From the NCBI RefSeq assembly GCF_963853765.1, contig NC_088858.1:5766001-5830000 (forward strand): a stretch of 64,000 nt of DNA. The letters run 5' to 3'. A program made the translations under genes and the position numbers. Positions 29,198 through 64,000 of this stretch are shown here, piece after piece (the first letter of the stretch is position 1; each line of letters begins with the position of its first letter). The notes under the pieces were generated by a model that made no database searches, was not told the DNA's origin, and saw only the letters and a list, made by a program, of their open reading frames with translations. The stretch comes from Magallana gigas (Eukaryota).

Positions 29198-29506
29198 TAA
29201 TTAAACTAAGATTTAAATTTCCTTTCAATAAATCATTCACTGGTTGTTTGTGTGTAAGAGTTATTGTTCCTTACTTAAAGGTCGTGAGATAAATTGGTGC
29301 GAATATACCGAAAAACAAAAAACTCACCCAACTGCACCGGTGGCCATCAAATCAGACAACTTTGTTTAAACACTTTCCAAGGCTACGCCTCATAATACAC
29401 TGCAATATTACACTCGCTAGTAATTGATCGAAAAGAATGTGAAAGTTTAAGTAGTTTTATTTCAACAATATAGTAATTGATAAGTAATGAGTTGAGGAGT
29501 ACAACA

Positions 29507-32500
29507 ATGGGTACTAAAGCCTCCGTGCAGGGTTCCTCCAGAACCAATGTTAAGAAGAATGGAGAACCCCGGGAGCCGGACGAGGAAGATGTGAGTGACG
29601 ATTCGTTATATCATCATATTATAAATAGCTTTGTCTGTCTATGAATTATTGACCAAGAAAAATGATAAAATTTTCAAACAATCGAAATATAATGATATTG
29701 TAACGTTATCGTTTTTTTATAGCGTATTTTATGTACCACGTATGTACCATGTAATAAATAAAGTACCAGCTGTTTAAAACAGATTGATTGTATTACATTT
29801 GTTCGATTTTTTTTAGGTTGACGTTCCCGAATTTCCACCTGATGAAGACTACCCTCCCCCAAAACAAAACTCGCAGAAAAAGAACGACATTTACGAACCT
29901 TCGCGGTACAAGGACGTCCATAAGCACGTTAAAAATGTACCTCGGTTTTATTCAAAATTAGTTCGCCTCAATTTTTCTACTTTCAAATCCGCACTATAAT
30001 TCACAATTACTAAAATATCTGTTGTGTTATTCTATTTTTCAGATTCCCGCAAAGATTGATATGTCATTCAAAAAATTGCTGAACTACCTTGTACAACCCT
30101 TTAGGACTGATATGCAGAAGTTGCGTGCGCTGTTCATGTGGCTATGCGTGCAGCCCGTCACAACTGCCAGATACAAAAGTTTGGAAGGTTATTTCCCTGA
30201 AGATCTTGCTAAGACCCCTCGAGGTTTTATGAAGCTCATCAAGGAGGGGAAGGCTTCTTATGCATCCCTGTTTGCCGTTCTGTGCAGGTAAAACACAAAT
30301 TACGATATGTCAAACGATTTCTATATGACCTTTAATTAACCTTACAAAGTTAAAACCTGCACGCATAGTTCATATCAGTTTCACGAAAACATGAATTCAA
30401 TTATTATAGAAAGGTGCAAACACAATTTCGTAAAGGGTGGTATATTACTCAAATCCGAATATAAATGAACTATGAAATCATAAATGACAACTATTGATTA
30501 GTGTATTCTGTTTTTTTTTTAATTTGTAGAAGATCGGGGATCAAATGCGTAATAATAAAAGGGGTGTGTAAGAGCGCTGGCTATGAGGTAGGGACTTCTG
30601 ACACACTGAAGAACCTTCGGACCAAGTGGAATGCCGTGTGGGTCAATGACAGCTGGAGGTTAATTCACCCATTGTGGGCGTGTCAGACGGTGGTAGGTAA
30701 GTCCGAGCTCAACGATTGGACGGCGAACGACGACGAGGAAGAAAACACCGAGGGCTGGACGGTGCAGAAAATCAACGAGTTCTTCTTCCTTACAGACCCA
30801 CACGATTTTTTGTACTTCTGTTTTCCCGATGACCCAAAATGGCAACTGCTGATCCTACCGTATGATCTGAGAAAGTTTGTCCGCGTTCCGTTCCTTCAAG
30901 AAGCGTACTTTAGGCTCGGGCTACGGCTCGTCACAGAACAGAGCTGTATTTTGAACGATATCGATGGAGCTGTGGACATTGGGTTTCGAGTTCCCGAAGA
31001 TTACCCAATACAAATGAATTATGAACTGTTTTATAAGAGAGACGAGTCCGATGTTGACCTCGACAGCAGGACCTCTCTGAACAAGTTTGTTGTAATGAAC
31101 TTTGAGGACAATATATGGTCTTTTATCGTTAGGTTTCCAGTTCCAGGTGTTTACAAACTTTCAATTTTTGGCGGCCATATTGATCGTGATCACGTGCCGT
31201 GGATCGCGGACTTCCGACTTATCTGTAAAAATACTCGTGATAACTGTGTTCCCTTTCCCGATGCGCCGTGGATTGGAGTGGGCTATTCATACGAGGCCCA
31301 AAAGGCGGGACTAGCGGACCCATCCCACAAATCAGGAATCATCGTTATGAAACCTCATCAAGAAATCCACATGACGTTAATGATGGAAACATTTCTTAAG
31401 ATGAAAGTGCAGTTTTTACATGTCATTCTGAGTGAAGAAGACCTAAAGGAAAAGTTTTACTTCAAGAGAATAGTTGGGAGGATGGACATTATCGGGAAAA
31501 TACCTCAGCATGGCGACTATCTCATCAAAATTTTTGGGAAGCCTAAGGGTACAAGGGGAGAGTTAAAGAACATCTGTAACTATCTTATTACCACGGAAGA
31601 TCCAAGGCCTTCGGGGAAAAGGAGGAAAGGGTGGGAGGTAATCAAGTGTTATTTTTAAAAAATATATATAAATTACATTTACACGCCAATTAAGCAAAGG
31701 TCATGATGCATAGCTTGTACTTACTGCCAACCGGTAATTAAAATACACTTACAACATAAATTATACTATAATCTTTTTTATACACTGAATCTTTTTGCAT
31801 TGTGTTTCGCACTTTTCATTTTATTGATATTTACTTTATCTTTAAAGAATGCCAGAGAAAAGAATCTGAGAAAAGACGTGAAAGAAGCGACCAATGTGAA
31901 GGACATTGAACGACTGAAGCTGAGCATAGATAAGTTTGTGGGTGCCGGTCTGGAGGATAAAGGGGACTACAGCAAAGCCTCGACCAGGCTGGAGTTTCTG
32001 GAGGTCCAGCAAGGTTAGCTATAAAGTTGTAGTTGAAAGATCTATGAAAATATTAATTTTAACAACGCTTATTATGGCTAGCGATTTTAATAATTTTGTG
32101 AAGAGAAAAAGAAGCATAACTGTTTTGTATCACACTTTTTTGTAGCATTGATAGAGGCAATACAGAGAAGGAACGAAAAAATCCTTATCCCAGCGATCTC
32201 CATGGCGAATGGATCGGGATACAAAAAACGTCTGACTTTATTGATAAAAAAAGCCGAGGAAACTTTGGAGGATTTACGGTGTCTCGGAGGATTCCAACAC
32301 CCGATTCCAGACCTCAACAAACCAATCATTGCAGAGCTTATGAACTACGTCAGCCCACCATTAATCGTCCGTGACATCATGACTGCAACCTTCCTTCTGC
32401 TGGGCGAAACAGAGGAAGAACTAAAGGTACATATTTGTTGTTATCCAATGCCATTAGAATTCATGTTCATTTGTTTCAAACAAATGACAGGGGTATTACT

Positions 32501-32952
32501 ATCATTTCATTGTATCAAAATTTAATACAATGGATTGATACTTACACCCTTGTCCTTTTTAACTTTTTCAGTCCTGGGAGTTCATAAGGCTTCTGATGAG
32601 GACAACAGGAAGGAACAGTCTTCTGCAGCGCTTCCAGCGATTTATCCTGACAGAGGTTCCAACAGAGGTACAAACCAAGGCAGAGAATATGTTTAAGAAG
32701 TTCACTGAGGACGAAGTAAGGAAAACCAGCGCAGGCGCAGCCTCGTTCTTTGTGTGGGTAAGTGCAGGATCAGCGCGGCAATTCCTTTACAGTATACTTC
32801 CTTAAACTGAAGAGAATTTATTCAAGCTAAAAATAGTTTCATGATTGTTTGGAAACTTATTGGTCTTGGGATTTTTTTTTCAGATTCAAAAAGTGATGAC
32901 AAAACCCGACCCCAGCCCTGTACCAACAGATGGACAGAAACGGAAAAAGTGA
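29507..32952 (+). CDS. H1: hillarin/KY-like pseudo-transglutaminase with C-terminal dynein-MTBD-like domain (8 exons)
   Basis: MGTKAS start; YPPPK; LRALFMWL; SYASLFAVLCRRSGIKCVIIKGVCKSAGYEVG..KWNAVW..WRLIHPLW; FFLTDP..CFPDD..WQLL; two Ig-like modules; helical C-terminus; ends QKRKK*. Confidence 0.88.
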
Positions 32953-33523
32953 AGCAGGAAATCTTACAATGGAATGTAGAATGCATTGTTGTTATGATTT
33001 AAAATAAACTTGACTGTATAAAAGTGTTACATGCGTAATACATACAAAACTACATATGAATCACCCTGTTATCTGTAGTTTACACAGGCAGAAACGTATA
33101 TTATAAACAGTGCTACATGTATATTACAGTAAACATTTCAAATTAGTTCTTTTGTTTTATTCAATTACAAAATAAGACGAGAACTTTATAAACTGTATTA
33201 AACTCAATACCTCCGTATATGCTACAATTTAACGTGTAGAGAAATAACTCTCGTTTGAATAGTAAAAAGACACTTTATTATCAAGCTTTCTAAAGCTTTT
33301 AGGAACATCAATAAAGTTTTTTTACAGTTCATTATAAGTGTTCCTTGTGGTCCAAAAAATCGTTACACTCTATTTTGGAATTTAAATATGGTAAAGAGAG
33401 AAAAATCTATAAACGAAATCGATGTGTAGTGTTTAGTCTTTGATCTTTTATTGTTTCGCGCGTTATATTCTGGACAGAGGGGTTGCAATATTTCCGGTCG
33501 GCTGCTTGGATACGCTGTCATCG

Positions 33524-33531
33524 TGACGTCA
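33524..33531. promoter_or_regulatory. Palindromic CRE (TGACGTCA) near the putative non-coding first exon of H2
   Basis: TCGTGACGTCAT, ~25 nt before the donor CAAG|GTATGT (~33555). Confidence 0.4.
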
Positions 33532-34074
33532 TTGATTAACGCCTCCGAGTGCAAGGTATGTCTGAGATTATATTTTCCTTCTTTTTCGATATATTATTAC
33601 GGCTTGTTATAAATATATATTAATAAAATAAAACGCAGAAACAAATTAACTATTTGTTTTACTATGTATCATACTTTAAAGTCATTGTGTTACAAATGTC
33701 CTAATTTGCCTTTTTAAGCCTTATTTATAAAACTGGGTTTTATTATTTCATAGGGAAATTGGTTTGTGCAGTGTTGAGACTGAACGTTTACTCAAGAAAA
33801 CTATCTTAAAATACAATTAACTTGACGTATGATGAAACATTTTATCTCCAAACAGGAATACTTTTCTCTGGGTTAGGAAATTCGCAAAGTAAAGCACAGT
33901 GTTCTTAGAAAGAGTAATCAATTAATAATTTGTCACTCGTTTGAATATAAATCTAGCATTCGATCTAATGATTTTTTAAACATGTATGCATAATTAATTT
34001 CATCGATATTGTGTATCATCAGATAAGCTTTTTGCAGCACTGACAATCCAAGATAACTTGTCAAAGACCATATC

Positions 34075-34095
34075 GGGGGGGGGGGGGGGGGGGGG
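34075..34095. repeat. poly-G tract (21 nt)
   Basis: Direct reading. Confidence 0.95.
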
Positions 34096-34754
34096 CAGGT
34101 ACTTTTACCCTTTGAATGCCCAACCCACGGTATTTATTCTTTTTTATTGCTCTCACCCCCACACAACCTTTCATTTACGTATTATTTTGGACCACTTTTA
34201 ATGAAAATACTGAGTATATGCAAAAAATGAACACACTGTCAACGTTTCTGTGTATTTAAAATCATTACCATTAGATGCCAATCGATTAGATTAACGACAG
34301 TTCACATAAAATTTATATCAGTGAAACAATTAAATAATTCATTCAGTGCTGTGTTTATTTGTTATTCCACCATATGTCAATGGATCGTTAAGGGGGTTAT
34401 AACCCATTTAACTGAAACCCAAGATTTACTTAGTTCTTTTACTGTCAATAACAAAACAATTCATGATAAAACAAAGTACAAGGCCAATTAAATACCCGAT
34501 CTCGATCATTTAAAGATAACAATAGGCTTCTATTATTGATAACAGATTATCCTTGGGAAGGAATAACAGATATACATGTATATATAAGAATTCTCCAATC
34601 ACACGGACTATTTCCATCAGGTAGGCAGAGTTCAACCAGAACCACCATTTTATCATGATTTTATTTCTTATGCCTTGTTTTCATTTTCAAATAAAGTTTA
34701 AAATGCTTATCTTTAATCAAGGGAATTCCATGATGTGTAAGGTGGCGGACTAAC

Positions 34755-37700
34755 ATGGGAGGAGGAGCTAGTAAGACCCCCAAACAGGAGGCACCCACGG
34801 GATATAGCAGTGTACAACCAACACAGCAGCCTGCTGACCAAACCGAGCTGGACCAGAACCAAGGCGTGTCCGTCTCCATTAGGCCCCCCTCTGGGTACGA
34901 GGACGAACCTTCAGGGCCACGGAGAGAGTCTGACACCCCCAATTCTCCGGCGGAGGGATATCGGAGTGATGGGGTCAGCGGGGGCATTCTCGATCCCCTG
35001 CAGGAAAACACCAAAGATGCGGTAAGGGGCGCCGGTATGGTGTAGAACATTATTACTTCAATCTTTGATGGGTTGAAATGAAAATGATACATTCTTAAAT
35101 TGACTATTACAGTCTAGTGAATAGAAGTCAATAACGATTATTTAATTAAAATTATTGTTCCGGAGAAAAGGACGCCTTGATAAGTTTGATTTTTCTCAAT
35201 GTACAAAAAGCCACAAAGTCTAAATAAAGTTTAACGAGGCCTGGTCTAATTTCTTCTGCCCTAGATTTTTGAATGAAATTTTTTACATGAATTTCTACTG
35301 ATATAATTATTATTATAAGATAAAAAAGTAAGACATTTACCACACCGTTTGTTTATTTTTGGAAGTTTTAAGATTTTCCTGACAATTTTATCATAGTTTG
35401 AAAAAAAGTTTGAGACTGTTAAATAATTTCATTACATGTTGAATTGGTAATGGATAAAAATAGCGTTTTATCAGTGCAAAAAGGTCAAAATATCAATTAG
35501 GTGAAGAAATTGTAACATTTTTCTTTATGATCATTTTAATTTTATTTATTTTAAATAATATAAATTTGTATTTGGTGCCATGGTTCATTCCGATAATAAA
35601 ATATAGAGGGAAAATCGGTTTATGTGCAATCTGCACTTTCAGTGCAGAGAAGTCATATTAAATACACCGTAGCGCCAAATGAAGCATATAGACCCCAAAA
35701 TTTTGTTTTTAACTTTGGTTAAGCTATGTGTGTAGATTTAAAAAAAATACTTTAGGAAAAAACTTTAAGACTTTTGATCGCAGGATCCAACGTCCTTAAA
35801 CATACATAACCAACCGACTTACTGCAATGTATTAGTTCTGTATAACTACTAGTATCTTCATTTTTGTTTCATATAGCAACCTAACTATCGGTAAATTTTT
35901 TCTGTAAAATGGCTATATTTCTAAAATCATTTTGCTTGATTAACAATCAATTCATTCTATCATTCTCGTTAAAACCTCTGCTGGCTCCAATGGCTTAATG
36001 TGACATGTAATGACATAGGTCTATTTGTATTCTTTTTTTCATGCTTCTCCCAGGCCAATATTCCTGTTAACGAGACTGGCTACCCTCCACCCAAACCAGC
36101 TGTCAACCGGAAGTCCGACATTTTGAGACCTGCTGACATCGCGGAGGGTGACAAAAGAGCGAAACAGGTACATTCATAATTATCGGTGTAGATCAAACTC
36201 TGCATACCTAAGTGGGCTCGGCAAATTTGTCCTGTCACGTATTTGTATCCTCTTACAAACGTCACTTGTATTTCAAAACAGTGGTCATGCATCTTATATA
36301 CAAATTATGATTAACCTTTTAAAATCAGATAATAAAACATACACTAAGGACTTTCAGTATTCTAATACGTCCCTTGGTCAAAGCATATACATTTTATTCA
36401 ATCTATGATGGCTGTTACTCATTAATTAGATCAAACCTGGAGACGCCAACACATTTGAAGACCTAGCTTACCTCCTGACGAAAGGGATGTCACGTGATGT
36501 CCAGCAAATTCGGGCTATCTTCTCCTGGGTCGTTACACAGAATGTTCAAGAGATTGAATTCCCCGCAAACGTTATCCTGGATTCTCACATGGACATACTG
36601 AGACGCATGAGAGATGGGCAGTCGTCTTATACCACTCTTTTTACATTACTCTGCCGGTATGTGAATGTTAACACATGTTTGGGAGAACTGAAAAGTACGC
36701 CTAAACATTTTGAAGACGAAGTGTAAGTTCAGTTTATGATGCGAATGTCGCTTACAATTTTGTTCTTATTTTAGAGCAGCACATATCCCTTGCGTCATAA
36801 TTCACGGAATTGCAAAGAGCGCTGGATATGAAGTTGGTCATAAGGATTTGAAACATCTGCGGAACTTGTGGAACGCTGTTTTCATTAATGGTGGATGGCG
36901 TTTTGTGTTTCCATTGTGGGCGTGCCGAGCTGTAAAGAAGCATGCGCCTGGAGATTGGACTCTGGTGGACTCAAAGGGTAATAGTTAATGCATATATTTG
37001 ATTAAGTTTACGAATTTTATATTAAAAAAAAGAATTACTCTGGATATAATATTATCAGAATAGTTCAAATACACGACTTCATATATGTAATTTAAAAAGT
37101 ACATAAATTATCAGAACAATGGTCCCGCAAAGACGTGGGGCTAAATTGTGTCTGGGTTTTTATGTTACATGTATACATGCCACTTATCATCAACATTTAA
37201 TTTCATACGTGTATTTAAATTCTATTTAAACTTTGTGGCTTAAATTTGACGTATTATTCACTCTTCAAAGTGACCAATAAAATATTTTAAAACATTAACA
37301 CAAAAAATAACCGCAACAAAAATGGCGCATATTGTGCCAACAGCAACTATAACTGGACCCTGATTCCTGAGTTTGAAAGTTCTTATATCGCAAACCGGAA
37401 GCTCCAACCTTCCAGGCTACGGCGCAGTATCTTTACCAAAACGAGGCCTCTTGTATCAATCTTAATCGTACACATGCTACATAATTAAATGTGAAAAATT
37501 TGGCGTCTTTGTATTTTGTATTAGTAAAAAATCATATATGTTTGATTTATCTTGATATCTAACTTCATATTTTGGAACAGTGAACGATATAAGTGAGAGA
37601 ATAGACATTGATGAAGACAGCGTCAGTACCACCAGTGACCACTATTTCCTTACCGACCCAGAGGAGTTCATACACCGCTGCTTTCCAGATAAGCCCGATT

Positions 37701-40087
37701 GGCAGCTTCTGAGAACGCCCCTCACAAAGGATGAGTTTCTTGACATGCCCTTTCTCATGCCGCCATTCTTTGACTACAAATTAAAACTTCTGACAAAACC
37801 CAAGTGTGTTCTGAGTTCTAAGGACGGGATGTGTAACATCTCGATAAAGAGTCCTCAAATCGAGGACATGTTGATGACCTATGAACTTTACTATGACGTT
37901 AGGGAGTCGGGTTCCTCCTTACCCTCAGGGGTTCCCATGGACAGATGTGTGGCCATTATGCAACAGAAAGGAAAAATCGCTTTTAGTGTTCGATTTCTAC
38001 ATCCGGGGATCTACCGACTCGACATACATGGATCTTTGATAGGAAATGCTTTGTCTTTGTTAGGTTCCTTTAAGCTTGTTTGCAATAAAACCAGAGACAA
38101 CATCAAACCCTATCCCTGTAATCCGGACATCGGGTTTGGTCCGAACCTTATAACGAACCAGTCAGGCTTATTGTCCGAATCACATCACGAAAGTTTAATT
38201 AGCTTTAACTGTAGGAGGGGGACTGAAATAATATTTACAATGTCAAAACAGATGCAAATTCAAACTAAACTGTTTCACCAGACGATAGATGGTCAACAGT
38301 TAAAGGAGTATGTTTCTCACAGAAAGATTGGGAACCAGCTCTGTATCTTACTTGCAATCCCACAGAAAGGAGAATATGTACTCCAGATAAACAACAGATG
38401 GATGGAAGAGCCTGAATTCCAGAACGTATGTAACTACTTACTGGAGGCAGGGGACGGGGAGAAGAAACCACGGAACTACGAGGTATTTTAACATTTTACC
38501 ATACACTTCTCTAAATAACGCAACTTTTTAGTTAAGTACTGTGTTTCTTTTTTAATTTTGATTTGCATGTTAACTGAAAAATGGAATATCAACCAAGCTG
38601 CATTCTTCATGCGGCTTTCCATATATATCGTACCCATTTGGACATGCACGTGTTTTCTGTTTTTATTATAAGACGCCTTCAGAAAAGAAACTAAGATGCC
38701 AACTTCACGAGTCCCTGCGCTCTATGGACCCTGCTTTTGTTAAGCGCGCTATCGACCAGTTTTGTAAGTCTGGTCTGGAGGACAGCGGGGAGACCCAGCA
38801 GGCCCGGGACAGACTAGTGTACCTGAAGCTCTCAAAAGGTCTGTATGTAGACTGAACCAAACGTGAAAAGCTCTGCTTGGCCTTTACAACATTAGAAGTA
38901 TATTCTGATTGATTTTTTTGTATGAAGAAAAAAGGTTTGATTTATCAATACACCTCTCTAAAACAATCGCCCACCACACCTTAAAAATTGTATGACAAAT
39001 ATAAACAGTTTTAGGAAAGAAAATATAAATTTAAAAAAAAGGAGAAGATAAAACATTGTCTATAACACACGTGTGAAAGCTTGAAAAATGTTAGACGATC
39101 TGATGTATCTACAGGTCTGAGAGACAGCATTAATAGAAGAAACTTGGAAGCTCTAGAGGAGAGTGTCCAACCAGCCAAATCCTCTAAGTTCTCCCACAAA
39201 CTGCAGCCACTGATCCAGAAAGCAGAGGAAGAGGTGGCGGATCTAAAGAAGACGGACAAACACGCTCATGACATTCTAGAAATGAATTTACTCACGGTCA
39301 CAGAACTCCGCAACTACAAGACCCCCAAACCGATAGTCCATGACGTCATGAAGGCCACTTTTATTCTTCTAGGAGAGAGACAAGACTTGCTCGAGGTAAA
39401 ATACACTCTATACTTCATAAGTAGATGATTACAATGAAACAGTGCGCTCAGTATTTTTAGTACTGTATAAAAATGTAAATTATTTTTTGTTGGTTGTTAT
39501 TGGAGGACTGGATGGATGTTCAGAATCTGATGTGGAAGATTGGAAAAGAAGCTCTGATGAAGAGGATTGAAAACTTTGACAAGGACAGTGTAGATGAAAA
39601 ATTGGTCAAGGTGGCAGCACGATGTCTGAAGCCTTATGACGAGGACATGGCGCACGCTACCAGCGCTGGATGTGGGACTTTTTACGTCTGGGTATTTTAC
39701 ATGTTCTATCACAAGTGTGTAGACTGTTCCTAAACCTAGTTTCTGTCATGAAAACTGTTCAATTATATCAGGCAATATTGACTATGTTTTAAATTTCATT
39801 TGTTCGATTAGGCAAACAAGATCGTGTCCGAATATGCAAATGATGAGAAAAACGAGAAGCAACATCAAACATCGAGTCACTATAAAAGTAGTTCCAAAAG
39901 AGAGTACTCCGCCACCGATCCTTACAGCGGTGACGAAGATGAGGGGGTGGATAACGAACTGGACCAGTTTAGTCTTGACGGGGACGTTTCAACAGACCCT
40001 CGGGGTCGGTCCAATCACTCCCACGGTGGGGTTAATAACCCGGATGAAATTCGACATCATGAAGCAGATGACGGGTACAATTCTTGA
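34755..40087 (+). CDS. H2: hillarin/KY-like paralog (9 coding exons) with acidic C-terminal tail
   Basis: MGGGASK start with extended N-terminal exon; GYPPPKP; IRAIFSW; SYTTLFTLLCRAAHIPCVIIHGIAKSAGYEVG..NLWNAVF..WRFVFPLW; MTBD-like exons at ~39265-39830; ends GYNS*. Confidence 0.88.
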
Positions 40088-40449
40088 GGCAACGGACTGT
40101 ACAAAACACCAATAGAAAACCACAAATATGTAAAAGTGCATTGTGTCAAAATGTATATAAAATGTTTACCTAAGGTTGTTAAATTAATGTTCAATGAATT
40201 AAAGGGCAATATGACAGGCTGAACGTTCAAGTCTCTTTTGTACTCCAAAACCCCGACTGCCATCAATTGAATTCTCTTTAATCAGGAGTTATAATTAAGG
40301 CATACCCGTTGAACCAACCTTTAATGAAAAGTTCCCCCACCATTAAATTTACAGTTAGTAAATACATGCACATTTTGTTCTGCATGATTACCCCCCCCCC
40401 CCCTTTTAGTATTTTTTTTAAATCTGCTAAAAGCTTCGCAGAAATCAGT

Positions 40450-40454
<5 letters not shown>

Positions 40455-40510
<56 letters not shown>
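40455..40510. repeat. (TC)n microsatellite
   Basis: About 28 units. Confidence 0.97.
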
Positions 40511-40514
<4 letters not shown>

Positions 40515-41106
40515 ACGCTAATATATGCTGAATCGATAATCAAAAGTCTTTAAAAAATAACAGACAGTTTTGATCATCTTTAAACATTTGGAATTCCTCT
40601 TTCTGACAATTATATTTTAAAAGCTACGGATTTATGTATAGTGAAGTGCAGTAATAAATGGAAAAGCCATCAAACATTGGACTGAATACGAGTTTAAACT
40701 CTTGAGTCACGAATATTTATTCTATAATGGTTGTCATTCTTCACGTAAGCCCATTGAGAGCGTTTTTCCCAATTACGTCAACTGAGTACTGGAGACGGTG
40801 TTTTCTCCTGCAATACACATCACAGCGCAGGTAAGTAACGGGGTTTCTTGTCTAGTTCTCTATTTTCATTGAACTCGGTATGCTCTAAAATACAATGAAA
40901 ATTTTTTCTTTGTTAAGAGATAGACCACTTTTTTGAAATCTAAACCAATTTAACTGAAAGTAAACACAAGAGACAGCGAGGGGGTGCAGATGGCCAGGTA
41001 TCTGAACTCATTTCAAGTTTTACATTAAGTAAACACCCCCTTGGATCTTTTAAGCTGGCGTTGACAAGCAGAGTGTGTAGGTTCTGTGCATGAAGTATTC
41101 GGACTG

Positions 41107-55400: not shown

Positions 55401-58197
55401 CAATAATTCGAACTGCGTCAATATAATGATACTTTAGTTGTATTTTATAACATATTGAGCTGTAAATCAACTTGAGAGGATTTAAATCCCCTTTATTATC
55501 CCAGTTTAAAATTCGAATTGGCTGTAACATCAAAGCGAGTAACTAAATATGTAATCCATAAGTTTACAATGCTTATACTAAATAATCATGATTGAATTAT
55601 TTTTATTTCTAAACAAAGGGCTGTAAAGATACCATGTGTCTTCATACGGGGTCTTGCAAAAAGCGCCGCCTATGAGGTAGGAGACAGAACTGTAGATAAG
55701 TTGGGGAACTCTTGGACCGCCGTGTTTGTATCCGGTGGGTGGCGCTTTGTGTTTCCGCTTTGGGCTTTTTCAGCCATTGTTGGGCACAGTACTGGAACCT
55801 GGACCCTTGTTGAATCCGATGGTATAGTACCCAATAAAATTCTAACACCCACTAAACACTCCATTAAAAGAGCATATAAAGTCTCAATCACTTGATATTC
55901 ACAGCTGACATCATTTTCTCTTCTTAATTCTTTAATCACAAATTCCCAATTTTGGTTTTCGATTTCATGCGTCACGAATTTATTTCTTTATTACAAAACG
56001 CATTTCCTTTCTTCTCTAGGGCAAGGCGCTAGAGAAACGGAGGCCAAGTCCTCTGGGGTCACCGTCGCCAACTTCAACGACTACTACTTTCTGACCGACC
56101 CCGACGAATTCATCTACACGTGTTTTCCTCATGATTCCAAGTGGCAGCTACTGGCAAAGCCTTACACAAAGCAACAGTTCATAGATATAGCCAACTGTGA
56201 GCAGGCGTACTTTGAAAATCACATTCAAATCAATACAAAGCTGGAATGCTTATACAAGTCAGAAAATGGTGTTTGTGACATTGGTATTAAAAAAGCAAAT
56301 GAAGAGGAATTTAAACATTTGTACAAACTTTACTTCAACCATGAGTTGTCAAAGACCAAATTATCAAAAGAACTTCAGTTAGATAGGTATGTCGCCGTCA
56401 TGAACAATAAATCGGCGGTGAACTTTAGAATCCGTTTTCCTGGTGAAGGAATTTACAAAATGGAGATCTACGGCGGATCGCCGACCGGATTTCCTCTGAT
56501 TTGTTCTTTTCGATTGGATTGCAATGAAGGCGTCAGCAATGTAAAACCTTTCCCATGTAACCCCGAATCAGGGTTCGGGCCAAATCTAGTCACAGTTGCT
56601 GCGGGGCTAGAGGCAGAGTCTCATAAAACAGGCTTTATTAACGTTAAAAAGAACAAAAATGTTAACATAAGGTTCAACCTCAACAAACACGTTCAGGTTC
56701 AAACCGTTCTGGTTCACAACAATATTCAAGAGGAGGTGCTGAGTCGCCATGTCAATCATAAGGTCAAAGGTCAACACCTAGAGGTCAACGTAGAAGTTCC
56801 TCAGCAGGGAGAGTATGCTTTGCAGATAAACACAAAACCGAAAGGGTCCTCGGAACCCTTCAAAAACGCCTGTAACTACCTGCTGGCATCGGAGGACATG
56901 AACAAGAAAAAAAGATTTTATGAGGTAAGTTATGTTTAACAGGTAATTTTGTTTATTTACTAAACACATAGGGTTAAATTCCCCCTTACTTCTTTTGCCT
57001 AAATATATATAGACAGTGACATTAAAAATAATTTTGCGACCCATGGTTTATTACATCATCTTGAATGAGAACCCTTTAAATTTAATTTGGAAGATATGGA
57101 TGAAATTAAAACAGTAGCGAAAAAGTCATGTCTTCAGTACTAGTATATAATATGATCATTTGATTCCTTACTAGAATGCTGCTGAAAAGAAAGCTCGCAA
57201 TGAATTGGAAGGATGTCTGAAGTCAAACGACCCGGAATCCATACAGAAAGCTATTGATAACTTCGACCAGTTTGATTTGGATGACAAAGGAAAGAGAGAA
57301 AAGGCAGAGAGAAAGAAAAACTTTCTCGTTCTCCAGAAAGGTGAGCGATGCTCTATATAATGTGAGTTTTTACATTTTTACATGTTCAATGAATAATACC
57401 AAAATTTTGTGAAATGCAGAACTGAAGGAAGCAATAGCGAGGAGAAATGTAGATGTGCTGGAGACCGCTATAGACAACGCCAAGTCTTCCGAATTCTCGT
57501 CCAATCTCCAGAATCACATCACGGAAGCCGAGCAACTACTGGCAGAACTGAGGAAACTAAAGAGGTTTGCACACGAGGTCTTACAGATGAAGCAGTCTAC
57601 TATATCAGAGATCCATTCCTACAAAAACCCTCGTCCCCTGGCTTATGACGTCATGAAAGCCACGTATTTTCTGCTTGGTGAGAAAGAGGATCATTTACAG
57701 GTACATCATCATCACTGGAAGTTTTGGATAAATTATGTTTCATCACCTCACTGGCTGTTAAATATGGCACTTGAGTTTCATTACTATCAAAGCGGTCATC
57801 AGCAATATCCTATTGGATGTAAAGCGTGTTTTTCTCATATCGTGCATACATTCTTTTATAATAGGAATGGGAACAAATTCAGGGTCTTATGAGAAAATCC
57901 GGAAAACAGGGATTGCTACGGCGCGTGCGCCAGTTTGACACCATCAACGTAACGGAGAATATGGTGAACAGCGCGGCGCAGCTCCTACGTCAGTACGACG
58001 AAGAGACGGCGACGACGGCCAGTGCCGGCCTTGGAACCTTCTATAAATGGGTCAGTAGGTTACAGACGTGTTCGAAATATCTGACCGATTGGCCTATATA
58101 TGTGCCCGGTTTGTAGTTTCAAGGACAAATTTATTGTGCTTCTAACATTGTATTTTTATATTTTCAGGCGTCGAATGTAGTTGGTAATATGACATAA
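52442..58197 (+). CDS. H4: hillarin/KY-like paralog (9 coding exons), closest to H3
   Basis: MGSGGSK start; exon 2 at 52958-53071; WRFVFPLWAFSAIVGHSTGTWTLVE; ENMVNSAAQLLRQYDEE; ends ASNVVGNMT*. Confidence 0.88.
52892..52957 (+). repeat. 2 x 33-bp tandem duplication of the H4 exon-2 acceptor region
   Basis: TGTTAGTTGTTT(T/A)CATATTTAGATTGTATTTAG twice, ending at the used AG (52957). Confidence 0.9.
53051..53890 (+). repeat. Minisatellite, 30 x 28 bp, spanning the H4 exon-2/intron-2 junction
   Basis: Unit TCAGACAGTAGGGCCAATACAGTGAGTG; register holds from 53051 to 53863 (29 x 28); no spacers. Confidence 0.97.
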
Positions 58198-60039
58198 AGC
58201 CACCGTTTTTCACAGTTTGACCGGATTATTTAACGGAATGCAGATTTTACTGACAATTTCAACTTTTTCTGTGATATATATGTTTTCTTGAATTGCAATA
58301 CTGTATCAGGATCCTTGTGGTGTACATGCATCCTAAAAATAAATGGCTTTACATACTCATTGTCTATTCTATAAACTTAAGCGCTGTTTTGCCATGGATT
58401 TGTTCTAAGTAAAATTGAAACAAAACGTCTGTGCACATGCACTTTATTACATTAATTGTATTGCATTGGATTGTACATGTCGTCGATACAAACGCCCTCA
58501 AACTTAGTCTACTCTTCGAATTCCTTAATCACAATAGATATTAGGCAAATTAAAATTCACAGGCAATTTGCTTCATTAAAAATTGAATTCTACGCCATTC
58601 ATTGTTTTCAACAATCGTCGAACTCTTCATTCTTCAGAGGTAAAATGGTGCTATAAAATGGCCACGTAAATACCCACTTTAAGAAATCATCAGATGAATA
58701 AAATATAATAAAGACGTTTTATTAAGTTTATGATATCATGTAAACATTGAGACAAAAGACCCTTTGATACATGAATGATAGTTCTTACCGTTGTCTTTGA
58801 ATGAATTTAGTTTTATTTTATTTTATCAAACAATATTTACATTTGCAATTATATGCTTCTAGAATAGCAAAAACGTTCAATTCCATGTGAAATTTTTATA
58901 ACGATCACAATGATTACCGCATGCCCTTATCGTTTGACTGTTGTATTATTGTAAATTAACATAAAAACACTGTTATGTTAAAAATTCTGTACGATTTGCC
59001 TTTTTTCAAACGTAAAATCAACGATTGGATAGGAAAAAAATTAGTTAAAGTATAACCTGGTTTGCACGTCGCATGGCACGTCACAATGCACCAACGTCAA
59101 AAACGTACTAATCCGCTTGACATTGAGTTTGAATTTTGAACAAATCAATATCATTTTCAAAAGGAAAACGCATTCAATTTGTACAGAAAATTACAGAAAA
59201 ATTAAATTATAAGAAATGAACTCAATATATGCCCAACTTATACTCATACAACCTGGGTTATAAGTATATCTTGGGTAGATATCGAATTCATTTCTTAAAT
59301 GTTAAAAGTTCATCGAATATGAATTTGGTTGGTACGCGATCAATTCTTCTGAGAAGTCCTTTTATCACGTGACCAACTAAGTTCATATCCTAGTGAACTT
59401 TTCCACTTACTGTTAATTTCGTAAAAAGTTCATTATATAAAAGAATCTGACTTCTTGAGAAAGCCGAGTGGTCAACATATCATAGTATAGACATCATTAG
59501 TTTTCCTTAAACTTTTAGATAATTATAATTTATTAATTAAAAGCTATAAACTATGTTTGTAAATAGAATCACTATTTTTCAACTTTTAAATTTTGAGCAT
59601 TTTTCTATATCTTTATACAAAATTCTTCTTCTATAGGAGATCAATATAGGCTAGTATTTACTACGACCATTCAGCTCTATTAATGGATTCTATTCTTTGT
59701 TTTCACTGCTTTTTAAACACGGTAAATTACAGATTATATGCTTAAAGAAATATTGAAAGTATTCCAATACGTATAAAGAAATATAATGAATAAAATGGCA
59801 ACAAAACTAAAACTAAAATGTAAGCAACGGCAAAAATAAAAAAAAAATAAAAAAGTATTTTCTTCTTATATCACATGTAACTATCAATGGTTGTCGGTTC
59901 TTTAAGTGGCAATCGATTTTATTGATTAAGTTTATCTAAAAATCTGAAAGAACTGTCAGAGAATAAAGAAGAGAAGGCTTAGAAGCCACAGAAAGTACCT
60001 TATTTTACTTACGCCTGTGACGTAAATAGCGTTGCGTCG

Positions 60040-60047
60040 TGACGTCA
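60040..60047. promoter_or_regulatory. Palindromic CRE near the putative non-coding first exon of H5
   Basis: TCGTGACGTCAT, ~47 nt before the donor CAAAG|GTAAGA (~60094). Confidence 0.4.
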
Positions 60048-60871
60048 TAGATATATCAAATACGATGAAATATTGGTAGAAATGTATCGACAAAGGTAAG
60101 ACAGATTTTTATAATTACCATTCCCATTAGTACAATTATTTTGCTATCTATAATGTTTTATGTTCCAATAAGCGTGCATTCCTTGGATACTGTTAAGTCA
60201 ATTTCATTTTGTTATACTTTTTTAAGCAGAAATTTATTATTTCAAATGCCTCGACTCCCGTAAAAATAGGTTTGGATTTGCTGCATGGTGAATAGTTTTA
60301 TCACTTGTTTAGAACGTATGACATCGGTTACTATATGCTAGTATACAATAGCCTTTAGTGTGTGTTGGGAAATGTTCTTTAACTTTAATTACTATGTCTG
60401 CAAAAGTAATCTTTTAAATATGGCATAAAAGAAACACAACTTGGTCATTTTTTTTAGGGTACTGTAGACTTTCGTTAACTGTTCCATTTGTTTTCAAGGG
60501 GAGATATACATGCATGAATGAATACACACTAAATGTCATGCTATTCCCTCCATTTTGCTTTGTCTTTAATTTTAAATGGAAAACATAATCTTAAAAGACA
60601 TTGCCAAATCTTGAATTGCTTTGATCCACAGATACAACAGAAAAAGAAAACGTAAGTTTAGTTTGTAGTACAAAACGTTCAATGGTAACAGGGTTGTAAT
60701 CATTTAAAAATCAAAATAACTCGTACACTGGTTTCTTCATAAAGGTTTCTTCAAGAAGTTTTCTAACATTTAAAATATTTACTTTCTTTTCTTAGTTGAA
60801 GATAGATATTTAGATGCACATGCAGTCAAACTATATCGGAAAAATGCCAGACAGACGGTTCTAATGTAAGA

Positions 60872-63800
60872 ATGGGGTGCGGATCCTCTACTGCCGACGT
60901 CGTAGTCGTCATCCATTCCACCGACCCGTTACAAGAACCCACCACAGAACTGGTAAAAAGGCAGTCCAAAACACTTTATCAATCTAAAATGAAATTTATT
61001 TAAAGTTCCTCAAGATTTGAAACCTTTCAACCTTTCATCGTGTACTTTGGTTGTTTTACCTCATCATCAGTGACGTACATGTATCTATTTTTACAAGTCA
61101 TTATATTAATTGTAACAGGTACATTAATATTATTTATGTATTTTTGTCCAAGGAAGACAATTTTTCTAGCATTTCAATTGTCCTTTCATTATCCAATATA
61201 GAACTCAGTTCCTGACACACTGGATGGGTATCCTGTTCCTAGACCCTCGCACAACCGGAAGTCGGACGTCCTACAATTTCTCAATTTCAAAGAAGTGGAT
61301 AATGATGCTAGAAACGTAGGTAATCAAACCTGCATTTCTTTTCATGTGTAAGCATGCATGGATTCACTGGGTTTTGATTCTCAATGATTTAGGTGGTTCC
61401 CGGTGACTTCAGTACAATAGAGGACCTTAGCAGACGAGTCACAGCGGCCTACCCAAAGACGCTGTCAAAGGTCCGCGCGTTGCTTGTATGGCTGTCTGCT
61501 CAACCTATTCTCAGTCAAAAGTGGTCCACTTCCGCTCAAGCCGAATCTCCAGAGGGCATACTCGGCATGATGCAAAGAGGAGAGATGTCATATGCCACGT
61601 TCTTTGCCATGCTTTGTAGGTATGTTTATTCAACTTGGAGAAGCATTAATGGAAATAATGCTTTCTAAAACTATAAAGGTTATGCGGGTTATTTTTTAAC
61701 AGGGCAGTTGATATTCAATGTGTTATAATACATGGAATCGCTAAAAGTGTCATCTATGAAGTTGGGGAGACTAACACAGACGGACTGACCAATTCCTGGA
61801 ACGCGGTCTTCGTTGGAGGGTCGTGGCGACTTATATTTCCACTCTGGGCATGTCGAAGTGTCGTCGGTCATAGTACAGGGAAATGGATCCTGATAGAGCC
61901 GAAAGGTTGTCGTCGTATAAAGTTTGATGCTTTGAAGAGTTCGTTTGATTTTTCACTGAATAAACTTGTATGTAAAATTTAATACATCTCATAGTAAGTG
62001 TAGTAAGATCAATAATGTCAATTTTTGTCGTTATTTCCTAGATATTGGTAAACTAGAATCCGAGAAAACGACAGGCGGTGCTGTGATACAGCAGCTGAAC
62101 GAGTTCTTCTTCCTCACAGATCCTGATGTTTTTCAGTACCACTGCTTTCCAAATGACCCACTGTGGCAGTTGGTGCCCAAGGTTATCTCTTTGGAAAAGT
62201 TTCTTTCACTTCCGTTTTTGAGACAGGACTTTTTCGAAAACAAACTCAAACTGATGAGCACTTCCTCATGTCGGCTTGAAGCCACACGAGGAGAATGCGA
62301 CGTAGTCATAAAGACACCGGATAACCTGTCGCTAACGTTTTCCTACGATTTGCAATTCAGCAGCAAAGACTTGGATTCAAAACCACCATCTCAAGGACAG
62401 CCTCAGAATTGTGTAGCTATGGTCCATCAGGATAACAAGGTGTCATTTTCAGTAAGGTGCCCCACTGAAGGAGTTTATAAGCTGAAAATATATGGTGGTC
62501 GGGAAGGTGACAAGCGGTGGTTATATTCAAATTGCATCGTGTGTGCTGAAGTAAGCGACCATATCATTCCTTATCCAACTGCCCCAGACATCGGTTTTGG
62601 ACCCCAGAAACTGACAGAGGAGGCGGGACTTATAGCAATGTCTCACAAGTCGGGATGTGTGCAAGTTCAGAGAAACAAAACCTGTGAAATTAGTTTTACA
62701 TTGACGAAATTCGTATTAGTTCATTCTACCTTGCATAGATTTGATGTATCTAGCAACAGTCTTGCGCAGTATGTCTCACAGCGCATACAAAACGATAACT
62801 TGCGCATTGACGTCACCCCACCACAAGATGGCGAATACACTCTCCACATCAACTGCAAAGAGAAAGGGTCAAAAAATGGATTCATGAACGTTTGCAATTA
62901 TCTCTTGAATACTGATGTCAAGAATACAAGATCCTGGGAGGTATGTTATCATTCTTTTTGATGATGAAGCGTGCTTAAGCATTTGTTTATTCAGTCTTGT
63001 GATCTGTATAATTATGGTCCAGAATGCGCGGGAAAAAGTGGCGAGGCAGGATCTCAGAGCGAAGACATTGTCCGTGACCACCAAGAATGCTAAAGAACTC
63101 CAGAATGCGATTGAAAAGGCCAACCAACTTTGTTTAGAAGACAAGGGAGATCTCAAGTTCGCCCATGAACGTTTAGATTTACTTCAGCTGCAAAAAGGTA
63201 CTGCAAAGATAGAAATTGAGTTTTTACTGCTTAGAAGGTTTAACTAAAGGTTTAATTTTTGTTTTAGCCCTGGATGATGGTATAAACAGAAGAAATGTAG
63301 ATATTCTTGAGCCAGCTATCAAAGCGGCAAAAATATCGGATCAAGTGTATAAACTTTCGGACCGTATAAAGGAGTCAGAGGAACTCCGAGACCACTTACT
63401 AACCCTGAAGAGATTTGCACATGACGTACTCGATATGAAGCAGACGACAATATCGGAAATCCATCGCTATTCCATTCCTTCCCCTGTGATATTCAACGTC
63501 ATGAAAGCAACATTTCTACTGCTGGGAGAACATCCACAGAACTTGGAAGTATGTTTTGAAGTTTGAAAAAAGTATGTCATAATTAGCCCCGCAAATAAAA
63601 TTTACTGGGAGTGGGGTTTATTATTTTGGGAATCAACATCTTGGTCTGTAATATTTTTTCAGGAGAGAGTTTAAAAGCTAGAGCAAGGATTTACCTGAAA
63701 ATGTACCATAGATTTTTTTATTTACCATATAAACTTAATTATAGACCTAAAAAATTTTAATGATTGGAACATATTTATCTGGATCCTTTGGGAGGGAGGG

Positions 63801-64000
63801 GTTAGTCTTTCCGTGGCAATTCTAATTGCTTAATTATTCATAACAACACACATTGTTCGACAGATTTGGGAAGACCTGCAAGTACTGATGAGACAGACAG
63901 GGAGACAGAGTCTGTTATACAAGGTCCGGAAGTTTGACACCCTGGGAACAGACAGGGAGTTGGCCACGAGAGTTCTCCACATTCTGGAGCCCTACACTGT
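60872..64000 (+). CDS. H5: hillarin/KY-like paralog, 3' end runs out of the window
   Basis: MGCGSST start; GYPVPRP; VRALLVWL; SYATFFAMLCRAVDIQCVIIHGIAKSVIYEVG..NSWNAVF..WRLIFPLW; MTBD-like exon begins ~63864 (IWEDLQVLMRQTGRQSLLYKVRKFD). Confidence 0.87.

What the first reader, a model, noticed from the sequence alone, without database searches (positions are those of the whole stretch)
29507..64000. Five-gene tandem array of membrane-anchored pseudo-transglutaminases with a dynein-type microtubule-binding module: candidate membrane-microtubule linker system
Every copy has the same order: MGxxxS lipidation motif, YPPP linker, hillarin/KY transglutaminase-like fold without catalytic residues, two Ig-like modules, two ~50-aa helical repeats, and an MTBD-like domain. 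Classical hillarin and LTD-1 carry an N-terminal LIM domain, which is absent here. Membrane anchor at one end and putative microtubule binder at the other suggests a motor-less tether, for example between ciliary or sperm membrane and axoneme. The copies are deeply diverged but all keep open frames, which implies selection. I cannot confirm from here that this is undescribed.
Basis: partly seen in the sequence, partly recalled or inferred. Interest (0 to 1): 0.85.

Follow-up and report, generated by a model that had tools for sequence, protein, structure and literature searches.

The report
Lipid-anchored hillarin-like genes ending in dynein MTBD
Five neighbouring oyster genes encode inactive transglutaminase-like (hillarin/KY-type) proteins that start with a fatty-acylation signal and end in a motor-less copy of dynein's microtubule-binding domain, which suggests an undescribed way of tying membranes to microtubules.

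Summary
Five co-oriented, intact, spliced genes occupy 29507-64000, and the fifth runs 262 bases past the window. They encode 731-873 aa proteins that are 34-41% identical to each other (g3/g4 64%). Intron positions are conserved.

RNA contigs and raw poly-A reads confirm all seven introns of gene 1 and join all its exons in one mRNA. Transcript-derived database proteins match genes 3 and 4 at about 99%.

Each protein has these parts:
- an N-terminal MGxxxS myristoylation motif (MGC in two copies);
- a KY/hillarin core, made of a transglutaminase-like domain plus two Ig-like_KY domains, with the Cys-His-Asp triad replaced by Lys/Arg, Asn and Phe/His;
- two homologous helical repeats of about 50 aa;
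- a C-terminal domain homologous to the dynein MTBD (profile against PDB E 9e-9; predicted fold Z 15.1, rmsd 1.9 Å over 114 residues).

There is no return coiled coil and no motor. Drosophila Hillarin, C. elegans LTD-1, vertebrate KY and yeast Cyk3 share only the core.

The acyl-motif plus MTBD pairing recurs in molluscs, a brachiopod, a leech and amphioxus; a tunicate has the module without the motif. It also occurs in short proteins that lack the core. Lipidation and microtubule binding are inferred, and the cilium/sperm reading is untested. The scan noted a similar four-gene family elsewhere in this genome.

The parts
29507..32952 (+). Gene g1 (752 aa). Exons 29507-29590, 29817-29936, 30043-30287, 30530-31637, 31848-32013, 32146-32426, 32572-32757, 32884-32952
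   Evidence: Model. All 7 introns confirmed by contigs of three RNA-type runs plus raw poly-A reads. One 2836-nt contig joins all 8 exons.
34755..40087 (+). Gene g2 (873 aa). Exons 34755-35021, 36054-36167, 36430-36656, 36775-36977, 37581-38482, 38673-38838, 39115-39395, 39506-39691, 39812-40087. Long N-terminal disordered exon and an acidic C-terminal tail (net charge -12)
   Evidence: The orthologue P0184 (Saccostrea echinata, 844 aa) has the same termini, 60% identity. No direct transcript evidence. The exon 5 acceptor (37581 or 37605) is uncertain.
41107..46510 (+). Gene g3 (754 aa). Exons 41107-41202, 41438-41551, 42650-42882, 43396-43598, 43758-44650, 45257-45422, 45519-45799, 45884-46069, 46418-46510. 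Tail ends in KKKK
   Evidence: 98.9% identical over 754 aa to transcript-derived P0182 (contig 2681 nt, 139 member sequences).
52442..58197 (+). Gene g4 (731 aa). Exons 52442-52525, 52958-53071, 54952-55178, 55619-55821, 56020-56924, 57175-57340, 57420-57700, 57865-58050, 58168-58197. No charged tail
   Evidence: 99.5% identical over the full 731 aa to transcript-derived P0175, with the same start and end. AF2 model of P0175 has pLDDT 89.4.
60872..64000 (+). Gene g5 (746 aa), cut by the window end. Exons 60872-60952, 61202-61315, 61393-61619, 61703-61905, 62042-62940, 63023-63197, 63268-63548, 63864-64049, and a last exon at window-equivalent 64188-64262. Basic tail (net +8)
   Evidence: Completed from L003. 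P0004 is a near copy whose N-terminus is mispredicted. The exon 2/3 junction was chosen by paralogue analogy.
29507..29590 (+). N-terminal acylation-motif exon of g1 (MGTKAS). Equivalents: g2 34755-35021 (MGGGAS), g3 41107-41202 (MGCGGS), g4 52442-52525 (MGSGGS), g5 60872-60952 (MGCGSS)
   Evidence: All five fit PS00008 at Gly2. The motif is found in 88 of 195 fetched module-bearing proteins that start with M, and in 50 of 78 of those 560-900 aa long. Modelled as disordered, pLDDT 34-45.
30043..31637 (+). KY-type core of g1: pseudo-transglutaminase domain plus two Ig-like_KY domains. Equivalents: g2 36430-38482, g3 42650-44650, g4 54952-56924, g5 61393-62940
   Evidence: PF23265 E 1e-30 to 6e-50. 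PF01841 is weak here but above threshold in orthologues. Foldseek gives Hillarin E 2.5e-35, LTD-1 1.4e-34, KY 1e-27, Cyk3 1e-16 and FAP246 3.5e-15. Triad replaced.
31848..32013 (+). Helical repeat 1 exon of g1. Equivalents: g2 38673-38838, g3 45257-45422, g4 57175-57340, g5 63023-63197. Helical repeat 2 is the first half of the next exon
   Evidence: hhalign of repeat 1 against repeat 2 profiles: prob 92.7%, E 4e-7. Modelled as helical hairpins.
32146..32952 (+). Helical repeat 2, the dynein-type MTBD and the tail of g1 (exons 32146-32426, 32572-32757, 32884-32952)
   Evidence: Alignment A1; profile against PDB; same mRNA as the core.
39115..40087 (+). Helical repeat 2, MTBD and acidic tail of g2
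45519..46510 (+). Helical repeat 2, MTBD and KKKK tail of g3
57420..58197 (+). Helical repeat 2, MTBD and short tail of g4
63268..64000 (+). Helical repeat 2 and MTBD of g5 (continues beyond the window)
   Evidence: AF2 model of the near copy P0004:470-648 gives Z 15.1 to the dynein MTBD.

Best explanation
These are five ancient, expressed paralogues of an invertebrate subfamily of the KY/hillarin/Cyk3 pseudo-transglutaminase family. Each protein is probably N-myristoylated on Gly2, and palmitoylated on Cys3 in g3 and g5, so that its folded core sits within about 20 residues of a membrane. The core is a catalytically dead transglutaminase-like domain plus two Ig-like domains and most likely acts as a protein-binding platform, as in yeast Cyk3. 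A flexible hinge (about residue 505) leads to two helical hairpin repeats and a stand-alone dynein-type microtubule-binding domain. This domain keeps the CC1-like entry helix and helices H1-H6 but has no return coiled coil and no motor. The most likely mechanism is a passive, ATP-independent tether or adaptor that links the cytosolic face of a membrane, plus whatever the core binds, to microtubules. The variable tail (KKKK, none, or acidic) would tune affinity among paralogues. Shown here: genes, splicing, expression, domain homology, predicted folds, loss of the catalytic triad, and family-wide co-occurrence of the acyl motif with the C-terminal MTBD. Inferred: lipidation, microtubule binding, and the cellular site.
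For: Gene models and conserved intron phases. mRNA evidence (P0175 and P0182). MTBD homology: a profile of the C-terminus against PDB returns 53 dynein heavy chains among 54 hits, all at the MTBD, best E 9e-9. The AF2 model (pLDDT 86.5) superposes on mouse dynein 5ayh residues 3286-3406 with Z 15.1 and rmsd 1.9 Å over 114 residues, and the ten best hits are all dynein MTBDs. Pfam PF12777 scores just under threshold in orthologues and is precomputed in some. Dynein hallmark positions are kept: the H1 Lys, PP, the LLG motif, the Trp in H3 and the S.A..F..W motif in H6. The acyl motif fits PS00008 in 5 of 5 copies and in 88 of 195 module-bearing proteins, against a recalled background of about 1-2% of proteins. 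That set includes leech, Lingula, Lottia, amphioxus and short core-less proteins of about 350 aa. The module is C-terminal, with a median of 10 residues after it. Long-term constraint: synonymous sites are saturated while dN is 0.27-0.74, and there are orthologues in other oyster genera. The only solved KY-type core is FAP246 of the ciliary central apparatus, a microtubule-based structure.
Against: No experiment shows lipidation or microtubule binding. In dynein, MTBD affinity is set by the CC1/CC2 registry, and CC2 is missing here. The MTBD cores are near neutral (net charge -3 to +3), and g2 carries a -12 tail that should repel the acidic microtubule surface. RSP2 of the radial spoke has the same fold (Z 10.9) and by my recollection does not bind tubulin there. 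Foldseek E-values alone were weak (0.01). The N-terminal motif is only a sequence pattern.
Confidence: 0.5

Rival explanations
1. The C-terminal domain has the dynein MTBD fold but has been re-used for a contact other than tubulin, for example docking to another protein in a larger assembly. In that case the proteins are membrane-anchored scaffolds with no direct microtubule contact.
For: Non-dynein proteins with this fold exist: Chlamydomonas RSP2 (7jtk_C, Z 10.9; AFDB Q6UBQ3 residues 430-591), T. brucei FAZ1 and human EFCAB5. CC2 is missing, the cores are near neutral, and g2 has an acidic tail.
Against: The residues that define the dynein MTBD signature are conserved across phyla. Many members end in Lys-rich tails typical of microtubule binders. 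A Toxoplasma protein bound to an intraconoidal microtubule also gives a weaker match to the fold (9ya2_L, Z 7.7).
Confidence: 0.2
2. The proteins are ciliary or flagellar components that bridge the ciliary membrane to axonemal doublets in gill, velum or sperm.
For: Dual acylation is a known ciliary targeting signal (general knowledge). The other non-dynein proteins with this fold are flagellar (RSP2, FAZ1). The only solved KY-type core, FAP246, is axonemal. Microtubule-membrane bridges are documented in scallop gill cilia (PMC2110547). An oyster 'kyphoscoliosis peptidase' falls together with radial-spoke and CFAP proteins after larval metamorphosis (PMC7525975), but whether it is one of these genes is unknown.
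Against: No localisation or tissue data for these genes were obtainable, because run metadata are coded. Gene 1 mRNA appears in runs from at least seven studies, which suggests broad expression. In another study an oyster KY gene grouped with filamin and talin, which are cortical cytoskeleton genes (PMC3348941).
Confidence: 0.15
3. The proteins are Cyk3/D-hillarin-like regulators of cortex and cytokinesis. The dead transglutaminase domain would bind a Rho GTPase or septins at the plasma membrane, and the MTBD would couple this to astral or midzone microtubules.
For: The core is structurally homologous to Cyk3 and Hillarin. The inactive transglutaminase-like domain of Cyk3 binds Rho1-GDP, and D-hillarin localises to the cleavage furrow and interacts genetically with a septin (PMC3718969).
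Against: No partner has been tested. Five or more diverged paralogues here, and about 17 module-bearing loci genome-wide, suggest diversified and probably tissue-specific roles rather than one housekeeping cytokinesis function.
Confidence: 0.15

Closest known systems
Drosophila Hillarin (Q0E908), C. elegans LTD-1 (G5EF51) and vertebrate KY (Q8NBH2, Q8C8H8)
   Same: They share the transglutaminase-like plus two Ig-like_KY core. Foldseek E is 2.5e-35, 1.4e-34 and about 1e-27, covering query residues about 26-503. PF23265 is shared.
   Different: Hillarin and LTD-1 end exactly where the second Ig domain ends (hit residues 817/818 and 721/723). The aligned core begins only at residue 316 (Hillarin) and 255 (LTD-1); from the entry name and from memory, that N-terminal region holds LIM domains, but I did not scan either protein. 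The oyster proteins have no LIM; they have an acylation motif of about 20 residues. They add about 225 C-terminal residues (helical repeats plus MTBD) that Hillarin and LTD-1 lack; KY aligns only to residue 558 of 661, and its last ~100 residues were not examined.
Yeast Cyk3 (Q07533, O14302)
   Same: Same catalytically inactive transglutaminase-like plus Ig core (E about 1e-15 to 1e-16). This is the precedent for a dead transglutaminase domain acting as a binding module (Rho1-GDP; PMC3718969).
   Different: Cyk3 has an N-terminal region (SH3, from memory) instead of an acyl anchor, and it has no MTBD.
Dynein heavy chain microtubule-binding domain (Pfam PF12777, central part; e.g. PDB 5ayh, 3err, 6kio, 6rzb)
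   Same: Homologous in sequence (profile E 9e-9) and in six-helix fold (Z 15.1, rmsd 1.9 Å over 114 residues). It includes part of the CC1 entry helix.
   Different: There is no CC2 return helix, so no antiparallel stalk. There is no AAA+ motor and no flap insertion. The chain ends 10-25 residues after H6, mostly in a charged disordered tail.
Non-dynein proteins with an MTBD-like fold: Chlamydomonas RSP2, T. brucei FAZ1, human EFCAB5
   Same: They show the same fold outside a dynein (Foldseek probability 0.96-1.00; 7jtk_C Z 10.9).
   Different: Their domain contexts are unrelated, with no KY core and no acyl motif tested. Sequence similarity was not detected here.
Chlamydomonas FAP246 (7n6g, 7sqc; C1 central-pair apparatus)
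   Same: It is the only solved structure with a KY-type core (sequence E 1e-3; Foldseek E 3.5e-15 over 583 columns).
   Different: FAP246 keeps His and Asp at the positions aligned and belongs to a different multi-domain protein. No MTBD-type module was identified in it here.

Membership tests
KY / hillarin / LTD-1 / Cyk3 pseudo-transglutaminase family | Transglutaminase-like core fold | tested here: met
   PF01841 is weak in the window exons (E 0.01-0.1) but above the gathering score in orthologues (30-32 bits against 23). The full-length AF2 model matches Hillarin, LTD-1, KY, Cyk3 and true transglutaminases.
KY / hillarin / LTD-1 / Cyk3 pseudo-transglutaminase family | Two KY-like Ig domains (PF23265) after the core | tested here: met
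   Two stretches in each of the five genes, E 1e-30 to 6e-50 against a 27-bit cut-off.
Classical hillarin / LTD-1 subgroup | N-terminal LIM domain(s) | tested here: not met
   No LIM hit in any exon or full-length homologue. The core starts about 25 residues after Met1.
Active transglutaminase / cysteine peptidase | Cys-His-Asp catalytic triad | tested here: not met
   Using g4 numbering, Cys is replaced by K130 (K/R/N across the family). The register was checked against the canonical C-x-G-F-A motif of P0011. His is replaced by N172 and Asp by F187 (F or H).
Dynein heavy chain MTBD | Sequence homology to the MTBD part of PF12777 | tested here: met
   Family profile against PDB: 53 of 54 hits are dyneins at the MTBD, best E 9e-9. 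Single sequences are sub-threshold in Pfam (23.3 against 24 bits).
Dynein heavy chain MTBD | Six-helix globular fold | tested here: met
   Z 15.1, rmsd 1.9 Å, 114 residues against 5ayh. The top ten hits are all dynein MTBDs. This rests on a predicted model, not a solved one.
Dynein heavy chain MTBD | Antiparallel CC1/CC2 stalk joining it to an AAA+ ring | tested here: not met
   The proteins end 10-25 residues after H6. There is no AAA+ domain in 731-873 aa.
Dynein heavy chain MTBD | Binds the tubulin intradimer groove | not testable with these tools
   Tubulin could not be supplied to complex prediction, and no experiment is available.
N-myristoylated (and S-palmitoylated) proteins | Met-Gly start fitting G-{EDRKHPFYW}-x(2)-[STAGCN]-{P}, with Cys3 for palmitate | tested here: met
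   5 of 5 genes fit, and g3 and g5 have Cys3. Conserved across phyla. Actual lipid attachment is not testable here.

The most novel reading that the evidence does not exclude
A motor-less dynein MTBD is a portable metazoan microtubule-anchoring module, systematically paired with N-terminal dual acylation. These acyl-KY-MTBD proteins and their core-less relatives of about 350 aa would then form a new class of membrane-to-microtubule tethers. They would be candidates for the molecularly unidentified microtubule-membrane bridges seen in bivalve gill cilia since 1980.
Probability: 0.15. Interest if true: 0.85.

Novelty: new variant of a known kind. Interest (0 to 1): 0.66.

Why it matters
Dynein's MTBD is normally treated as a part of the motor whose affinity is set through the stalk. 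Here it appears as an autonomous C-terminal module. About 630 representative clusters match at E <= 1e-10, an unknown share of them being dyneins. Members come from molluscs, brachiopods, annelids, cephalochordates and tunicates. Many members have a lipid-anchor motif at the other end.

If it binds microtubules, this is a simple and testable membrane-microtubule linker family that the fly, worm and vertebrate KY-family members tested (Hillarin, LTD-1, KY) lack, which may be why it has gone unnoticed. It would also give a natural, stalk-free MTBD for studying how the domain binds tubulin without registry control. It would assign a plausible job to the enigmatic dead-transglutaminase KY/hillarin core in invertebrates. 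If the domain does not bind tubulin, it still documents re-use of the MTBD fold.

Tried and rejected
- Pfam on single exons found no PF12777 hit, because the domain is split over two exons.
- phmmer of one C-terminus against PDB gave only borderline dynein hits (E 0.04). A family profile was needed.
- Foldseek E-values for the C-terminal model were weak (>= 0.01) even though the hit list was almost purely dynein. The VIA-align second look settled it.
- Nei-Gojobori dN/dS could not be computed because synonymous differences are saturated in every pair. I report only that dN is far below saturation.
- My first reading, that the catalytic Cys became Ser132, was rejected after checking the register against a canonical motif. 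The equivalent residue is K130.
- The careful phylogeny did not finish in the time allowed, so the quick tree was used. The placements of g1 and g5 are long-branch and unsure.
- Literature: 'hillarin' occurs in 6 papers, none on a C-terminal or MTBD domain. 'W180 domain' gave 0 papers. The D-hillarin paper (PMID 15818553) is not held. I therefore could not check whether the 'H domain' of leech hillarin is this module.
- Contact residues from the dynein-microtubule cryo-EM paper could not be extracted usefully.
- Complex prediction was not used because tubulin cannot be supplied.
- Tissue of expression could not be read because run metadata are coded.
Full report
**What is in the sequence**

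The window is AT-rich eukaryotic DNA. tblastn with bivalve 'kyphoscoliosis peptidase / hillarin-like / ltd-1-like' proteins found five co-linear sets of exons on the + strand.

I refined every junction by listing GT..AG pairs that keep the frame open and scoring them against homologues. I then settled the N-terminal, repeat and tail exons by eye. The five models are:

| Gene | Span | Exons | Length |
|---|---|---|---|
| g1 | 29507-32952 | 8 | 752 aa |
| g2 | 34755-40087 | 9 | 873 aa |
| g3 | 41107-46510 | 9 | 754 aa |
| g4 | 52442-58197 | 9 | 731 aa |
| g5 | 60872 onward | 9 | 746 aa |

- g5 is cut by the window end. I completed it from locus L003: exon 8 ends at window-equivalent 64049 and the last exon is 64188-64262.
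- None of the models has an in-frame stop.
- Exon lengths and intron phases are the same in all copies (114, 227, 203, ~900, 166, 281 and 186 nt). g1 has lost one intron.
- A six-frame search of the whole assembly (564 Mb; the window is contig 6, 5,766,001-5,830,000) shows no further copy next to the array, so it has exactly five genes.
- That search also finds about a dozen more loci with the same C-terminal module, including a second cluster on contig 7 at 51.51-51.55 Mb.

**Are the models real and expressed?**

Contigs from three RNA-type runs in three studies, plus raw poly-A RNA-seq reads, were laid on 29400-33100. They show exactly the seven introns of my g1 model. One 2836-nt contig joins all eight exons. 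The helical and MTBD exons are therefore in the same mRNA as the core.

- The g4 model is 99.5% identical over its full 731 residues to P0175, with the same first and last residues.
- The g3 model is 98.9% identical to P0182.
- Both come from contigs of 2.3-2.7 kb, which can only be spliced mRNA because the genes span 5.4-5.8 kb.
- g2 has no direct transcript evidence. It does have an orthologue with the same termini in Saccostrea echinata (60% identity).
- g3 has orthologues in Crassostrea virginica and Saccostrea at 76%.
- I infer from these matches that the organism is an oyster (Ostreidae).

**Divergence and selection**

The paralogues are 34-41% identical, and g3/g4 are 64% identical. Synonymous sites are saturated in every pair while dN is 0.27-0.74.

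In a quick tree, g2 and g3 each group with orthologues from other oyster genera, and g4 branches before the g3 orthologues. The duplications therefore predate the split of those genera. g1 and g5 sit on long, deep branches, so their placement is unsure.

Neighbouring locus tags, or shared contigs, for paralogues in Potamilus, Sinanodonta, Batillaria and four scallops suggest that such arrays are common in molluscs.

**N-terminus**

The five proteins begin MGTKAS, MGGGAS, MGCGGS, MGSGGS and MGCGSS. All fit the PROSITE N-myristoylation pattern at Gly2. g3 and g5 add Cys3, the usual palmitoylation partner (established knowledge).

The motif is conserved far beyond this locus. It is found in 88 of 195 fetched proteins that carry the C-terminal module and start with Met. 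In the 560-900 aa class it is found in 50 of 78. These are lower bounds, because many gene predictions have wrong starts. The proteins carrying it include leech (Helobdella MGCGSS), Lingula, Lottia and amphioxus.

In the full-length AF2 model, only residues 1-20 are disordered.

The GYPPPK segment (GYPVPR in g5) is not a linker:
- It is modelled with pLDDT 81-94.
- It lies inside the region that superposes on Hillarin, LTD-1 and KY.

**Core**

Each gene gives two strong PF23265 (Ig-like_KY) matches. The transglutaminase core match is weak in the window exons but above threshold in orthologues.

The AF2 model of P0175 (46-sequence alignment, pLDDT 89.4) was compared with reviewed AlphaFold entries:

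| Protein | Foldseek E-value | Aligned query residues |
|---|---|---|
| Drosophila Hillarin | 2.5e-35 | 26-503 |
| C. elegans LTD-1 | 1.4e-34 | 38-501 |
| Mouse and human KY | ~1e-27 | ~29-500 |
| Yeast Cyk3 | ~1e-16 | 40-499 |

Hillarin and LTD-1 end exactly where the second Ig domain ends. They therefore lack everything after residue 503 of the oyster protein. Their own cores begin only at residues 316 and 255, behind a long N-terminal extension.

The best solved structure is Chlamydomonas FAP246 of the ciliary central apparatus.

The catalytic triad is gone:
- The Cys position is K130 in g4 and K/R/N across the family. I checked the register against the canonical C-x-G-F-A motif of P0011.
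- His is replaced by Asn172.
- Asp is replaced by Phe187 (Phe or His in the family).

**Helical repeats**

The exon after the Ig domains and the first half of the next exon each encode a helical unit of about 50 residues. Profiles of the two units align with hhalign probability 92.7% and E 4e-7. The same unit is iterated more often in some Haliotis proteins. No Pfam family matches it.

**C-terminal domain**

- Single sequences give sub-threshold Pfam PF12777 hits confined to the MTBD part of that model (23.3 bits against a cut-off of 24). They give only dynein MTBDs in PDB at E about 0.04.
- A profile was built from three database homologues plus the window's own exons (A1). It returns 54 PDB sequences at E <= 1, and 53 of them are dynein heavy chains matched precisely at the MTBD. 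The best are E 9e-9 for yeast dynein and 6e-8 for DNAH6.
- The AF2 model of the near copy of g5 (pLDDT 86.5) superposes on the mouse dynein stalk/MTBD 5ayh, residues 3286-3406. Z is 15.1 and rmsd 1.9 Å over 114 residues. The ten best matches are all dynein MTBDs.
- Homology to the dynein MTBD is therefore established as far as computation can.

What is missing matters as well. The chain ends 10-25 residues after helix H6, so there is no CC2, no stalk and no motor.

The tails differ between paralogues:

| Paralogue | Tail |
|---|---|
| g1, g3, g5 | Lys-rich |
| g4 | none |
| g2 | 81-residue acidic tail, net charge -12 |

**Distribution**

An exhaustive profile search found 1945 representative clusters at E <= 1e-3, 631 at <= 1e-10 and 103 at <= 1e-30. 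Named members with the KY core plus module come from these groups:
- bivalves, gastropods and a chiton;
- Lingula;
- the leech Helobdella, a likely hillarin orthologue that also starts MGCGSS;
- amphioxus, where some members carry CARD domains.

The module also ends other kinds of protein:
- CLCA/VWA proteins in amphioxus and a VWA protein in Styela;
- a protein that also contains a TMIE domain;
- a conserved molluscan family of about 350 aa that has only the acyl motif, a helical repeat, the MTBD and a KKK tail.

Some of these are auto-named 'dynein heavy chain coiled coil stalk domain-containing' or 'cytoplasmic dynein 2 heavy chain 1-like'. Databases have therefore registered the similarity, but I found no paper that discusses it.

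Other non-dynein proteins with this fold are RSP2, FAZ1 and EFCAB5.

**Interpretation**

An acyl anchor at one end and an MTBD at the other recur together, with or without the KY core in between. This is the strongest argument that the selected function is to connect a membrane surface to microtubules. The dead transglutaminase/Ig core would be an added binding platform, as in Cyk3, which binds Rho1-GDP (PMC3718969). I put this at about 0.5.

The main rival is that the fold has been re-used for a partner other than tubulin, for which RSP2 is a possible precedent (about 0.2).

- the flagellar identity of the other MTBD-like proteins;
- FAP246;
- old ultrastructural evidence for microtubule-membrane bridges in scallop gill cilia (PMC2110547);
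- a larval proteome in which an unidentified oyster 'KY' co-varies with radial-spoke proteins (PMC7525975).

**Novelty**

Both building blocks are known families and the fused proteins sit in public proteomes. As an architecture and as a candidate class of motor-less MTBD tethers, it appears undescribed. I rate it a new variant of a known kind.

Noticed in passing
window 53047-53889: A 28-nt minisatellite with 30 copies (94% matches) starts inside the end of g4 exon 2 (which ends at 53071). The exon-end-plus-GTGAGT donor is therefore repeated through intron 2. The transcript-derived protein P0175 uses the first donor.
   Followed up: partly
window 48227-49017: Tandem repeat of about 162-165 nt (2-3 copies, about 80% matches) in the 6-kb gap between g3 and g4.
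   Followed up: no
window 40455-40510: Perfect (TC)28 microsatellite about 370 bases downstream of the g2 stop codon.
   Followed up: no
G000 contig 7, 51,511,441-51,549,698 (- strand); also C6:8.30 Mb, C6:23.17 Mb, C6:55.94 Mb, C7:5.97 Mb, C7:34.40 Mb, C3:5.85 Mb, C3:28.84 Mb: About a dozen further loci in the same genome carry the helical-repeat plus MTBD module, including a second tandem cluster on contig 7. This probably corresponds to the four-gene family noted earlier by the scan.
   Followed up: partly
P0142 (MMETSP protist transcript, 1150 aa): A protist protein has four tandem dynein-type MTBDs (PF12777 E 9e-58, four stretches) and no motor domain.
   Followed up: partly
P0095 (Branchiostoma, 1480 aa), P0123 (Styela, 1489 aa), P0021 (534 aa): The same C-terminal module ends CLCA-N plus VWA proteins and a VWA protein, and it precedes a TMIE domain in P0021. 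These would be anchoring contexts other than N-acylation.
   Followed up: partly
P0017, P0029, P0237-P0255 (molluscs, about 300-480 aa): A conserved family of short proteins has only the MGCxxS start, one helical repeat, the MTBD and a Lys-rich tail. It is the minimal version of the proposed tether. All members are uncharacterised.
   Followed up: partly
PDB 7n6g_6E / 7sqc_X0 (Chlamydomonas FAP246): The only solved structure with a KY-type transglutaminase-like plus Ig core is a protein of the ciliary C1 central-pair apparatus. It keeps His and Asp at the aligned positions.
   Followed up: partly
window 31044 (g1 exon 4): One RNA contig (run X1) lacks 12 bases here, an in-frame 4-codon polymorphism or variant. 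Several other single-base differences between runs fit the high heterozygosity of oysters.
   Followed up: no
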